Shown: positions 24,100 to 24,311 of the stretch, piece after piece | Layout: the number at the start of each line of letters is the position of its first letter | How positions within the stretch are numbered: position 1 is the stretch's first letter | Assembly: GCF_006345805.1 (NCBI RefSeq) | Contig: NC_043006.1 | Span: forward strand, 248,001 to 312,000 | DNA length: 64,000 nt | Direction: 5' to 3' | DNA from: Octopus sinensis | Lineage: Eukaryota | Program-made: the position numbers and the translations under genes | The notes under the pieces: model-generated | The model's database searches: none | What the model was told of the DNA's origin: nothing | What the model saw: the letters and a program-made list of their open reading frames with translations, nothing else

Positions 24100-24208
24100 C
24101 TATATGAAGCCCGAGTGCTTTGCATTCAAATTAGCTTTTGTAACAGTTCCCAGAATTCCTTCACTTCCAATAAACAGATTTGTTAGGTTATAACCAGCAG
24201 ATGTCCTT
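24100..24208 (-). pseudogene. Duplicated, truncated copy of LDHD exon 6 with intact acceptor; reads [35 protein letters not shown] then stop
   Basis: About 83 nt are closely similar to 24726-24831, including the upstream AATTATTCCTTATTTTTTCCAG acceptor. Sequence diverges after GCTAATTTGAA; TAG at 24102-24100. Confidence 0.9.
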
Positions 24209-24267
24209 CTGGAAAAAATAAGGAATAATTTGTCAATTCTTGAGAATGACAAATTTTGTATATGTAC

Positions 24268-24311
24268 CTATTCTTGCTATGGGGATACCACACTACAAAG
24301 TCATCAACTGC
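24268..24311 (-). pseudogene. Duplicated 3' half of LDHD exon 7 with intact donor; in-frame CAG to TAG change and an internal deletion
   Basis: TGATGACTTTGTAGTGTGGTATCCCCATAGCAAGAATAG|GTACATATACAAAATT versus the true exon 7 TGATGACTTTGCAGTGTGGTATTCCCATTGCAAGAATAG|GTACGTATACAAAATT. Confidence 0.88.

What the first reader, a model, noticed from the sequence alone, without database searches (positions are those of the whole stretch)
24100..24311. Scrambled duplicate of LDHD exons (7' then 6') inside intron 6, with live splice sites
Seen, in transcription order: true exon 6; a mariner-MITE fragment; the 3' half of exon 7 with its GT donor; a 59-nt GT..AG spacer made of intron-7 start fused to intron-5 end; most of exon 6 with its acceptor, ending in a new TAG; then true exon 7 5.3 kb later. 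Inference: relic of a tandem duplication of the exon 6-7 block, largely deleted afterwards. Retained intron flanks argue against a circRNA retrocopy. The 6' acceptor has the same phase as exon 6, so exon 5 to 6' splicing would give an in-frame truncated FAD-domain protein or an NMD (poison-exon) isoform. This could be an unannotated regulatory switch for LDHD.
Basis: partly seen in the sequence, partly recalled or inferred. Interest (0 to 1): 0.7.

Follow-up and report, generated by a model that had tools for sequence, protein, structure and literature searches.

The report
Scrambled exon-fragment relic in octopus LDHD
An intron of the octopus D-lactate dehydrogenase gene holds real but decayed copies of parts of two neighbouring exons, most likely left by two separate DNA copy-and-paste repair accidents, and nothing yet shows that the cell uses them.

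Summary
The window is Octopus sinensis chromosome CM016868.1, and the gene (minus strand) is LDHD. Intron 6 holds a 59-nt copy of the end of exon 7 plus 17 nt of intron 7 (7'). Directly after it comes a copy of the intron-5 tail plus the first 84 nt of exon 6 (6'). Both are about 92% identical to their parents (E=1e-17 and 8e-40).

The same patch is present in an independent O. vulgaris assembly, so it is not an assembly artefact.

The single tandem-duplication story is not the best fit:
- O. bimaculoides has an orthologous 6' but lacks 7' and the MITE fragment.
- Its intron-5 homology runs at least 14 nt past the sinensis 7'|6' junction.
- Argonauta hians has neither copy.

The most parsimonious history has two steps. 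A small 6' copy arose before the bimaculoides split. Later, in the sinensis/vulgaris lineage, about 40 nt were replaced by a MITE fragment plus 7', with microhomology at the junctions.

On function: 7' carries an in-frame TAG and a weakened donor. 6' has protein-damaging changes and no good donor downstream. Any use of the 6' acceptor gives an early stop, and no public protein model contains the patch. The one hint of constraint is that the 6' acceptor region is identical in all three octopuses. Splicing could not be tested here.

The parts
27175..27334 (-). LDHD exon 5 (160 nt), donor GAA|GTATGA; the upstream exon for the proposed exon 5->6' junction
   Evidence: Sequence read; tblastn with XP_029641647 aa 162-215
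27408..27578 (-). Full-length MITE-like repeat, copy B, in intron 4 (~174 bp, imperfect terminal inverted repeats GAAAGTTCTTGG / GAAAAGTTCCTGG); possible template for the MITE fragment
   Evidence: blastn 27408-27578 vs 15737-15910, 83.5%; sequences; orthologous copies in O. vulgaris and O. bimaculoides; agrees with fragment A at 3 of the 4 sites that separate ancestral B from C
24726..24831 (-). True LDHD exon 6 (106 nt, starts in phase 1, donor AAG|GTAAGT); parent of 6'
   Evidence: tblastn aa 215-250
24316..24408 (-). Internal fragment of the MITE-like repeat (copy A), lacking both terminal inverted repeats; present in O. sinensis and O. vulgaris, absent in O. bimaculoides. The leftmost ~16 nt (24408-24393) can be aligned both to the bimaculoides resident sequence (12/16) and to the MITE family (14/17).
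24307..24315 (-). 9-mer CTTTGCAGT, identical to exon 7 positions 18807-18799. The 7' copy then restarts 15 nt further upstream in exon 7, which looks like a slip-back during copying.
   Evidence: Read directly; chance of an exact 9-mer match within exon 7 is about 3e-4 (own arithmetic, noticed after the fact)
24252..24306 (-). 7': copy of the last 39-43 nt of exon 7 (to 24268) plus the first 17 nt of intron 7 (24267-24252). In-frame TAG at 24295-24293; donor TAG|GTACAT has lost the +5 G.
   Evidence: blastn 91.5%/59 nt, E=1.3e-17; alignments; translation; donor scores
24209..24254 (-). Intron-5 tail copy in front of 6': ATTTGTCA (24254-24247), 15-nt insert TTCTCAAGAATTGAC (24246-24232), then 23 nt of polypyrimidine tract plus AG (24231-24209). 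Inverted repeat ATTTGTCA / TGACAAAT (24235-24228). No substitution in any of the three Octopus species.
24125..24208 (-). 6': copy of the first 84 of 106 nt of exon 6; 7 differences, 5 of them amino-acid changing, including conserved EGTLGIIT residues
   Evidence: blastn 92.6%/108 nt, E=7.6e-40
24100..24124 (-). Unrelated sequence read through from 6' to the TAG at 24102-24100. The stop is not conserved in O. bimaculoides, where a 1-nt deletion changes the frame.
18775..18868 (-). True LDHD exon 7 (94 nt, donor TAG|GTACGT); parent of 7'

Best explanation
The patch is a non-coding molecular fossil in LDHD intron 6 of Octopus sinensis. It was most likely built in two steps by error-prone, template-copying DNA repair or replication, not by one tandem duplication of the exon 6-7 block.

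Step 1, before the O. bimaculoides / O. sinensis split and after the Argonauta split: a short genomic copy landed a few hundred nt downstream of exon 6, in the same orientation. It comprised at least 46 nt of intron-5 tail plus the first 84 nt of exon 6, with a 15-nt hairpin-like insert.

Step 2, in the sinensis/vulgaris lineage: about 40 nt just upstream of that copy were replaced by about 143 nt. The new stretch is an internal MITE fragment, a 9-nt stutter, and the last ~40 nt of exon 7 with 17 nt of intron 7. The pieces are joined at short microhomologies.

Shown here: the copies, their parents, their distribution among species, and their decay. Inferred: the order of events and the repair mechanism.

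The pieces are most probably inert today. If the intact 6' acceptor is ever used, the transcript meets a stop codon at once.
For: Copies and identity:
- The copies are real and far beyond chance, and are present in two independent assemblies.
- The gene is LDHD of O. sinensis: the window is 100% identical to GCA_006345805.1, and the proteins are named.

Distribution among species:
- O. bimaculoides has 6' at the orthologous position, with alignments continuous on both sides (24900-24393 to L001 12445-12936, and 24254-24050 to L001 12977-13170).
- It shares the same 15-nt insert, the same truncation point and two derived substitutions.
- In place of the 138-143-nt MITE plus 7' block it has 40 nt. 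There is no assembly gap at that spot.
- The last 14 nt of those 40 continue the intron-5 homology (12/14; anchored score 10 against 0.6+-0.9 in shuffles, 0/200).
- Argonauta hians has only the true exons.
- No intron-6 sequence is duplicated around the patch.

Junctions:
- ATT is shared at the 7'|6' junction.
- A ~16-nt stretch of imperfect similarity lies at the resident|MITE junction.
- There is a 9-mer slip-back, and an 8-nt inverted repeat in the 6' tail.
- Such features are described for SD-MMEJ / polymerase-theta repair (PMC2943611, PMC5068794) and for template switching with microhomeology (PMC6902434).

Decay:
- TAG inside 7'; donor +5 G>A.
- 5 of 7 changes in 6' alter amino acids.
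- Sinensis-vulgaris substitutions are 11/309 in the patch against 10/1166 in the flanks.

No sign of use:
- All public Octopus LDHD models skip the patch.
- No protein has the exon 5->6' junction.
- No donor matching at least 6/9 of the consensus lies within 600 nt after the 6' acceptor.
Against: - Polarity rests on three Octopus genomes plus Argonauta, whose intron cannot be aligned. No species branching between Argonauta and the bimaculoides/sinensis node was available, so loss of 7' and the MITE in O. bimaculoides is not excluded.
- Substitution counts do not separate the ages: about 3-4 changes in 59 nt on the 7' lineage against about 6 in 108 nt on the 6' lineage. 7' also keeps an ancestral A where sinensis/vulgaris exon 7 has a derived T, so 7' is not very young.
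- Two independent events within ~40 nt of each other in a ~2-kb intron is a coincidence that either model has to accept.
- The origin of the other ~26 bimaculoides-specific nt is unresolved. They are weakly alignable to exon 7/intron 7 (p~0.05) and to the intron-5 tail (p~0.14).
- The 48 nt around the 6' acceptor are identical in all three species. Only 6 of 1220 other intronic windows are, and the true exon-6 acceptor region is only 43/48. This hints at constraint and argues against complete inertness.
- No RNA data could be examined.
Confidence: 0.55

Rival explanations
1. One tandem duplication of the block from ~35-50 nt upstream of exon 6 to 17+ nt into intron 7 created a 7'|6' head-to-tail junction. 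Later deletions removed most of both extra exons and the extra intron. O. bimaculoides then lost 7' and the MITE fragment secondarily.
For: The order 7' then 6', in the same orientation and with intron-7 start abutting intron-5 end, is the classic junction of a tandem duplication. Divergence from the parents is similar for 7' (8.5%) and 6' (7.4%). 7' retains an ancestral base. The ~26 unexplained bimaculoides nt align weakly with the exon 7/intron 7 border (score 11 against 7.9+-1.6, 51/1000).
Against: It needs at least four events: a duplication, two large deletions and a bimaculoides-specific replacement. The two-step model needs two. In O. bimaculoides the intron-5 homology runs significantly past the supposed junction, so the junction seen in sinensis cannot be the original limit of the copy. 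No duplicated intron-6 sequence survives. The MITE fragment lacks both ends, which a simple deletion of one side does not explain. The weak bimaculoides match to exon 7 is only ~68% identical, whereas orthologous neutral sequence here is ~92-95% identical.
Confidence: 0.22
2. The 6' acceptor is a working, selected splice site. Splicing of exon 5 or exon 6 to 24208 gives a transcript with an early stop (a poison or decoy exon, or a truncated FAD-binding-domain protein) that tunes LDHD output.
For: The acceptor copy is almost identical to the true one (one T fewer in the T-run) and in the same phase. A plausible branch point TTGAC lies ~25 nt upstream, read from the sequence. The 48 nt 24254-24207 are identical in three species, against 0.5-1.5% of other intronic windows and 43/48 for the true acceptor. 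Both junctions give early stops.
Against: One post-hoc conservation test, and a longer 53-nt identical run lies in the same intron. The 6' body and the stop are not conserved: 7/84 sinensis-bimaculoides differences, a frameshift in bimaculoides, and a faster sinensis-vulgaris rate than the flanks. No donor matching at least 6/9 of the consensus lies within 600 nt, so exon definition is doubtful. No annotated or assembled product contains it. The truncated protein would lack the whole FAD-oxidase_C domain, aa 248-488.
Confidence: 0.13
3. Capture by a mobile element. The MITE-like repeat, or an autonomous relative, picked up LDHD fragments during abortive gap repair after excision, and the patch is what is left of that element.
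For: A MITE fragment sits directly next to the gene fragments. Full copies with terminal inverted repeats lie in introns 4 and 8 of the same gene.
Against: The fragment has neither terminal inverted repeat, and no element end flanks the far side of 6'. 6' exists without any MITE in O. bimaculoides. No second copy of the composite exists in the 64-kb window or the 82-kb locus.
Confidence: 0.05
4. RNA-templated repair. The pieces were copied from one unspliced LDHD pre-mRNA by a reverse transcriptase during break repair.
For: All pieces are in the sense orientation of the gene and contain intron sequence. The MITE fragment agrees with the intron-4 copy at 3 of 4 diagnostic sites, so every piece could come from the same primary transcript. 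Active non-LTR retrotransposons exist in this genome: an RVT_1 open reading frame lies in the same intron.
Against: Nothing here tells an RNA template from a DNA template. The same orientation for three pieces has a 1-in-4 chance. The two-step distribution means at least two separate events. There is no poly(A) or target-site duplication.
Confidence: 0.05

Closest known systems
Unannotated tandem exon duplicates / intronic pseudoexons (e.g. Ivanov & Pervouchine 2022, PMC9013439; pseudoexon review PMC8819188)
   Same: An exon-like sequence with an intact acceptor sits in the intron next to its parent exon, on the same strand, and is missing from annotation. It was found purely by similarity to the neighbouring exon.
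   Different: Here the copies are partial (84/106 nt and ~40/94 nt), scrambled (7' before 6') and carry stops. They arose at different times. No expression evidence is available.
Templated insertions at repaired breaks: synthesis-dependent MMEJ / polymerase-theta end joining (PMC2943611, PMC5068794, PMC4912351)
   Same: A deletion plus an insertion made of stretches copied from nearby sequence. There are 1-4-nt microhomologies at the joins, a slip-back repeat (the 9-mer) and a snap-back-like inverted repeat in the 6' tail.
   Different: The pieces here are 55-110 nt long and copied from 0.5-3 kb away, or from a dispersed repeat. That is longer and more distant than the few to ~30 nt flank-derived inserts typical of those studies (own knowledge). 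The enzyme cannot be inferred from sequence.
Replicative template switching (FoSTeS/MMBIR) with microhomeology (PMC6902434, PMC5120786)
   Same: Several short segments from the same gene neighbourhood are joined in one orientation. One join lies in a ~16-nt stretch of ~75% similarity, which fits the 7-14-bp, 70-90% 'microhomeology' described there.
   Different: Those cases are kilobase-to-megabase copy-number gains in patients. This is a 0.3-kb fossil fixed in species, and it seems to be the sum of two events.
The alternative exon pair of the same LDHD gene (isoforms X1/X2, aa 396-435)
   Same: An exon duplication inside LDHD, with the copies lying side by side in the same orientation.
   Different: That pair is intact, of equal length, only ~31 nt apart, conserved from Argonauta to Octopus, and annotated as two isoforms. 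6' is truncated, decayed and unannotated.

Membership tests
Intronic relic of partial exon duplication (pseudoexon) | Significant similarity to a neighbouring exon of the same gene, same strand | tested here: met
   92.6%/108 nt, E=7.6e-40, and 91.5%/59 nt, E=1.3e-17
Intronic relic of partial exon duplication (pseudoexon) | Copied from genomic DNA (intron flanks retained), not from spliced RNA | tested here: met
   17 nt of intron 7 and at least 31 nt of intron 5 are retained; at least 46 nt in O. bimaculoides
Intronic relic of partial exon duplication (pseudoexon) | No coding constraint (stops, truncation, damaging substitutions) | tested here: met
   TAG in 7'; 6' truncated at 84/106 nt; 5 of 7 changes are non-synonymous; faster sinensis-vulgaris rate than the flanks
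Intronic relic of partial exon duplication (pseudoexon) | Absent from known transcripts and proteins | tested here: met
   Seven public Octopus LDHD models skip it; no matching protein. RNA-seq itself was not available.
Single tandem duplication of the exon 6-7 block | Head-to-tail junction (end of block joined to start of block) | tested here: met
   Intron-7 start abuts the intron-5 tail at 24252-24254
Single tandem duplication of the exon 6-7 block | Both sides of the junction have the same distribution among species | tested here: not met
   6' is in three Octopus species; 7' is only in sinensis and vulgaris
Single tandem duplication of the exon 6-7 block | The junction is the limit of homology in every carrier | tested here: not met
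   In O. bimaculoides the intron-5 homology goes at least 14 nt further (0/200 shuffles)
Single tandem duplication of the exon 6-7 block | Remains of the duplicated intron 6 | tested here: not met
   No similarity between 24725-24409 and the intron distal to 6' apart from dispersed repeats
Templated insertion by microhomology-mediated repair or template switching | Insert composed of stretches with identifiable templates | tested here: met
   Exon 7/intron 7, intron 5/exon 6 and a MITE family member. The exact MITE donor was not identified.
Templated insertion by microhomology-mediated repair or template switching | Microhomology or microhomeology at the joins | tested here: inconclusive
   ATT at 7'|6'; ~16 nt at 75-82% similarity at resident|MITE; 9-mer slip-back. 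These are short stretches read after the fact.
Templated insertion by microhomology-mediated repair or template switching | Loss of resident sequence at the insertion point | tested here: inconclusive
   40 nt in O. bimaculoides against ~143 nt in O. sinensis. Polarity lacks an outgroup.
Templated insertion by microhomology-mediated repair or template switching | Dependence on a given polymerase or pathway | not testable with these tools
   Needs genetics.
Poison exon / NMD switch | Usable 3' splice site | tested here: inconclusive
   The sequence is nearly identical to the true exon-6 acceptor. Usage is not testable here.
Poison exon / NMD switch | Usable 5' splice site closing the exon | tested here: inconclusive
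   No site with at least 6/9 consensus matches in 600 nt. But the real exon-5 donor itself scores only 5/9, so the yardstick is crude.
Poison exon / NMD switch | Premature stop on inclusion | tested here: met
   Exon 5->6' stops at TAG 24102-24100; exon 6->6' stops after KDICWL
Poison exon / NMD switch | Junction reads, rising when NMD is blocked | not testable with these tools
   No RNA-seq access. The indirect protein search was negative.
Poison exon / NMD switch | Conservation above the intron background | tested here: inconclusive
   The acceptor region is 48/48 identical in three species (6/1220 other windows), but the exon body is fast-evolving.
circRNA or processed retrocopy | Exact exon-exon (back-splice) junction without intron sequence | tested here: not met
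   59 nt of intron-derived sequence lie between 7' and 6'
Mutually exclusive exon pair | Two intact copies of equal length and phase with their own splice sites | tested here: not met
   6' lacks the last 22 nt and the donor of exon 6
   Full copies B and C have ~13-nt imperfect terminal inverted repeats. No TA duplication is evident. Fragment A has neither end. No repeat library was available.

The most novel reading that the evidence does not exclude
The copied 3' splice site of 6' (24254-24207), perfectly conserved in three Octopus species while its own parent site drifted, is a selected decoy or poison acceptor that diverts part of the LDHD pre-mRNA into a dead-end transcript. It would be a regulatory element born from a repair scar.
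Probability: 0.12. Interest if true: 0.5.

Novelty: new member of a known kind. Interest (0 to 1): 0.25.

Why it matters
As it stands, this is a well-dated example of how short, scrambled exon fragments get into introns. Three related genomes show one piece arriving before a speciation and a second piece arriving next to it afterwards, with junction features typical of error-prone template-copying repair.

It is also a caution. A head-to-tail junction alone does not prove a tandem duplication, and exon-like intronic sequences with perfect acceptors can mislead gene prediction.

It would matter more if the conserved 6' acceptor turned out to be used, because that would show a splice-regulatory element arising from a repair scar in a metabolic gene. 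Nothing found here demonstrates that.

Tried and rejected
1. Assembly artefact: rejected. The patch with identical junctions is in an independent O. vulgaris assembly, and the O. bimaculoides site has no N-gap.
2. circRNA or processed retrocopy: rejected, because intron flanks are retained.
3. MITE fragment A as a fresh copy of the intron-4 MITE: not settled. A differs from ancestral B at 9/90 sites and from ancestral C at 11/90, and agrees with B at 3 of 4 diagnostic sites.
4. Longer intron-5 homology upstream of 6': free local alignments are not significant. Only the anchored 14-nt extension in O. bimaculoides is.
5. A 7' remnant in O. bimaculoides: scores 8-11, p 0.05-0.5, inconclusive.
6. 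Dating 7' against 6' by substitution counts: too few sites.
7. A non-coding RNA in the conserved part of the intron: Rfam gives only sub-threshold hits.
8. Evidence of translation or assembly of the exon 5->6' isoform: none among 5.8 billion proteins. Exact look-ups of the 50-aa 6' ORF and of a 92-aa neighbouring ORF found no contigs. These are weak negatives, because the collection seems to hold no Octopus RNA-seq ORFs for this gene.
9. The first protein search, with a 66-aa exon 6+7 query, returned only short exon-sized fragments from other animals. A full-length reference had to be obtained through the representative search.
10. My first exon-6 and exon-7 coordinates were off by one (note). 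They were corrected.
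Full report
**What the window is.** The gene lies on the minus strand. A peptide joined from the exon-6 and exon-7 candidates hits D-lactate dehydrogenase fragments. A longer query built from the window's exons is 98% identical to 'probable D-lactate dehydrogenase, mitochondrial isoform X2 [Octopus sinensis]', XP_029641647. The locus of that protein in GCA_006345805.1 (chromosome CM016868.1; L004) is 100% identical to the window over 1501 nt around the finding. 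The protein has FAD_binding_4 (aa 71-207) and FAD-oxidase_C (aa 248-488) domains. Borders read from the sequence:
- exon 5: 27334..27175
- exon 6: 24831..24726 (106 nt)
- exon 7: 18868..18775 (94 nt)

**Check of the observation.** blastn of 24050-24420 against the window gives three matches:
- 24125-24231 to 24748-24855, 92.6% over 108 nt, E=7.6e-40. This is the intron-5 tail plus the first 84 nt of exon 6.
- 24252-24310 to 18759-18816, 91.5% over 59 nt, E=1.3e-17. This is the last ~42 nt of exon 7 plus 17 nt of intron 7.
- 24316-24400 to a repeat at 27455-27538 and 15786-15868, about 86%.

The alignments confirm the acceptor ...ttattttttccag|AAGG at 24209/24208, the donor ...AATAG|GTACAT at 24268/24267, and the 59-nt spacer. 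In the exon-6 phase, 6' reads [35 protein letters not shown] and stops at TAG 24102-24100.

- 7' has an in-frame TAG at 24295-24293 (MTL*CGIPIARI).
- Its donor has lost the +5 G (GTACGT to GTACAT).
- The intron-5 tail in front of 6' carries a 15-nt insert, TTCTCAAGAATTGAC (24246-24232). This creates an 8-nt inverted repeat ATTTGTCA/TGACAAAT.
- The nine bases in front of 7' (CTTTGCAGT, 24315-24307) repeat exon 7 positions 18807-18799. The copy then restarts 15 nt further upstream (read).

**The repeat.** The full element is about 174 bp (27408-27578 against 15737-15910) with imperfect ~13-nt terminal inverted repeats (sequences). Copies B (intron 4) and C (intron 8) are orthologous in O. sinensis, O. 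vulgaris and O. bimaculoides. The copy next to 7' (A, 24408-24316) is an internal fragment lacking both ends. I saw no TA duplication, so 'MITE-like' is justified and 'mariner' is not established.

**Comparative evidence.** The LDHD loci of O. bimaculoides (L001), O. vulgaris (L002) and Argonauta hians (L003) were fetched through their annotated proteins.
- O. vulgaris, an independent assembly, has the whole patch with the same junctions. This removes the artefact explanation.
- O. bimaculoides aligns continuously on both sides: 24900-24393 to L001 12445-12936, and 24254-24050 to L001 12977-13170. It carries 6' with the identical 46-nt tail including the 15-nt insert, the same truncation point, and two shared derived substitutions. 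The three 6' copies are therefore orthologous.
- The 138-143 nt holding the MITE fragment and 7' are missing in O. bimaculoides. 40 nt stand in their place (L001 12937-12976), and no assembly gap is nearby.
- The last 14 of those 40 nt continue the homology to intron 5 directly upstream of ATTTGTCA (TTTTCAACGCTGCT against TTTGCAACCCTGCT, 12/14). The anchored extension score is 10, against 0.6+-0.9 for 200 shuffles, none reaching it.
- The copy of the intron-5 tail was therefore originally longer than in O. sinensis. The sinensis 7'|6' join cuts into it.
- Argonauta has only the true exons 6 and 7.
- Within the window, nothing from intron 6 is present twice around the patch.

**Origin.** A single tandem duplication of the exon 6-7 block would need the duplication, two large deletions and a further replacement in O. 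bimaculoides. The alternative needs two events:
1. A short copy of the intron-5 tail plus 84 nt of exon 6 was placed a few hundred nt downstream. This happened after the Argonauta split and before the bimaculoides split.
2. In the sinensis/vulgaris lineage, about 40 nt were replaced by a MITE fragment, a 9-nt stutter and 7'.

The joins fit template-copying repair:
- ATT is common to intron 7 and the resident tail at the 7'|6' join.
- The left join lies in ~16 nt that align both with the bimaculoides resident sequence (12/16) and with the MITE family (14/17).
- There is a slip-back 9-mer and a snap-back-like inverted repeat.

These are the features described for synthesis-dependent MMEJ and polymerase-theta scars (PMC2943611, PMC5068794, PMC4912351). 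They are also described for template switching with 'microhomeology' of 7-14 bp at 70-90% identity (PMC6902434). I hold the two-step history at about 0.6. The mechanism is an inference.

**Caveats on the origin.**
- There is no outgroup between Argonauta and the bimaculoides/sinensis node.
- Substitution counts cannot separate the ages. 7' keeps an ancestral A where sinensis/vulgaris exon 7 has a derived T.
- The remaining ~26 bimaculoides-specific nt are weakly alignable to the exon 7/intron 7 border (51/1000 shuffles) and to the intron-5 tail (138/1000).
- The MITE fragment differs from reconstructed ancestral B at 9/90 sites and from ancestral C at 11/90. It agrees with B at 3 of the 4 sites that separate them. 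A local template in intron 4 is possible but unproven.

**Function: evidence for decay.**
- 6' has seven differences from exon 6. Five change amino acids, including residues of the conserved EGTLGIIT stretch.
- Its stop is not conserved, because O. bimaculoides has a 1-nt deletion.
- 7' has a stop and a weaker donor.
- Sinensis-vulgaris substitutions are 11/309 in the patch against 10/1166 in the flanks (Fisher p=0.0013). Part of this comes from CpG decay and multi-nucleotide events.

**Function: splicing signals.**
- The 6' acceptor is nearly identical to the true one.
- No GT site with at least 6 of 9 consensus matches lies within 600 nt downstream. This is a crude yardstick, since the real exon-5 donor scores only 5.
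- Exon 5->6' gives a protein ending 35 residues after exon 5. It would lack the FAD-oxidase_C domain.
- Exon 6->6' stops after KDICWL.

**Function: evidence of use.**
- None of the seven public Octopus LDHD protein models includes the patch.
- A search with the predicted exon 5->6' product found only ordinary LDHD fragments, at most 70% identical.
- Exact look-ups of two open reading frames of the patch found nothing.
- These negatives are weak. RNA-seq could not be examined.

**The one hint of constraint.** The 48 nt 24254-24207 (tail, pyrimidine tract, AG and two exon bases) are identical in all three species. Only 6 of 1220 other intronic 48-nt windows are, all from one 53-nt run at 24570-24518. 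The true exon-6 acceptor region is only 43/48. This test was chosen after seeing the alignment. I take it as a reason to check RNA-seq, not as evidence of function.

**Comparison with what is known.** The object belongs with unannotated intronic exon duplicates and pseudoexons (PMC9013439, PMC8819188), and, by origin, with templated insertions at repaired breaks. It fails the defining tests for a single tandem duplication, a retrocopy and a mutually exclusive exon pair. The tests for a poison exon are open. LDHD itself contains a genuine, ancient alternative exon pair (aa 396-435, isoforms X1/X2, ~31 nt apart, present from Argonauta to Octopus). That pair shows what a retained exon duplication looks like in this gene.

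**Verdict.**
- Observation: confirmed.
- Interpretation: partly supported. It is DNA-level exon copies with a potential premature-stop acceptor, but probably not one tandem duplication, and there is no evidence for a switch.
- Novelty: a new member of a known kind.
- Interest: low to moderate, 0.25.
- Most novel surviving reading: a selected decoy or poison acceptor, probability about 0.12.

Noticed in passing
window 19367-23290: A block of ~3.9 kb in intron 6 that is absent from O. vulgaris and O. bimaculoides. It is bounded by (AT)n tracts (22824-23502 and ~19209-19366). It holds a minus-strand ORF with a reverse-transcriptase domain (RVT_1, E=5.7e-28) and a 322-bp repeat at 20297-20976. This looks like an O. 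sinensis-specific 5'-truncated non-LTR retrotransposon, and it is the reason exon 7 lies 5.3 kb from the patch rather than ~1.3 kb as in O. vulgaris.
   Followed up: partly
window 1-8064: A 66-bp satellite, 122 copies, 96% matches, with GC 53% and constant skew. It runs off the window start, inside the LDHD intron downstream of the exon at 9223-9318. The same intron is 14.6 kb in O. sinensis and 3.8 kb in O. vulgaris.
   Followed up: partly
L004 53029-53148 and ~53180-53299 (outside the window); also L001 22184-22451, L002 36708-36978, L003 22969-23232: LDHD has two tandem alternative versions of the exon for aa 396-435, annotated as isoforms X1/X2 in O. sinensis. They lie only ~31 nt apart and are present from Argonauta to Octopus. 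The spacing seems too short for an intron, which would by itself make the two exons mutually exclusive.
   Followed up: partly
L003 13007-13099 vs 13161-13253 (Argonauta hians): A 93-nt, 92/93-identical copy of the intron-4 tail, acceptor and first 39 nt of exon 5, lying 154 nt upstream of the true exon 5. It is an independent, recent partial exon copy with an acceptor in the same gene of another octopod, or possibly an assembly duplication near a T-run.
   Followed up: partly
window 24408-24100 vs L002: The sinensis-vulgaris substitution density is four times higher in the patch (11/309) than in the flanking intron (10/1166; Fisher p=0.0013). Several changes are CpG decay or adjacent multi-base changes (24363-24361, 24156-24155).
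   Followed up: partly
window 24570-24518 and 24654-24456: The proximal part of intron 6 is 94-98% identical between O. sinensis and O. bimaculoides, with a 53-nt run identical in three species. That is as conserved as exon 6 itself. There was no Rfam match above threshold.
   Followed up: partly
window 18600-18750: A dispersed SINE-like repeat starts ~25 nt after the exon-7 donor, with many copies in the LDHD loci of O. sinensis and O. vulgaris (88-94% identity).
   Followed up: no
cluster of P0268: A 48-aa protein (P0392, NCBI, contig of 4635 nt) with no visible similarity to LDHD is listed as a member of the 90% cluster of Octopus LDHD.
   Followed up: no
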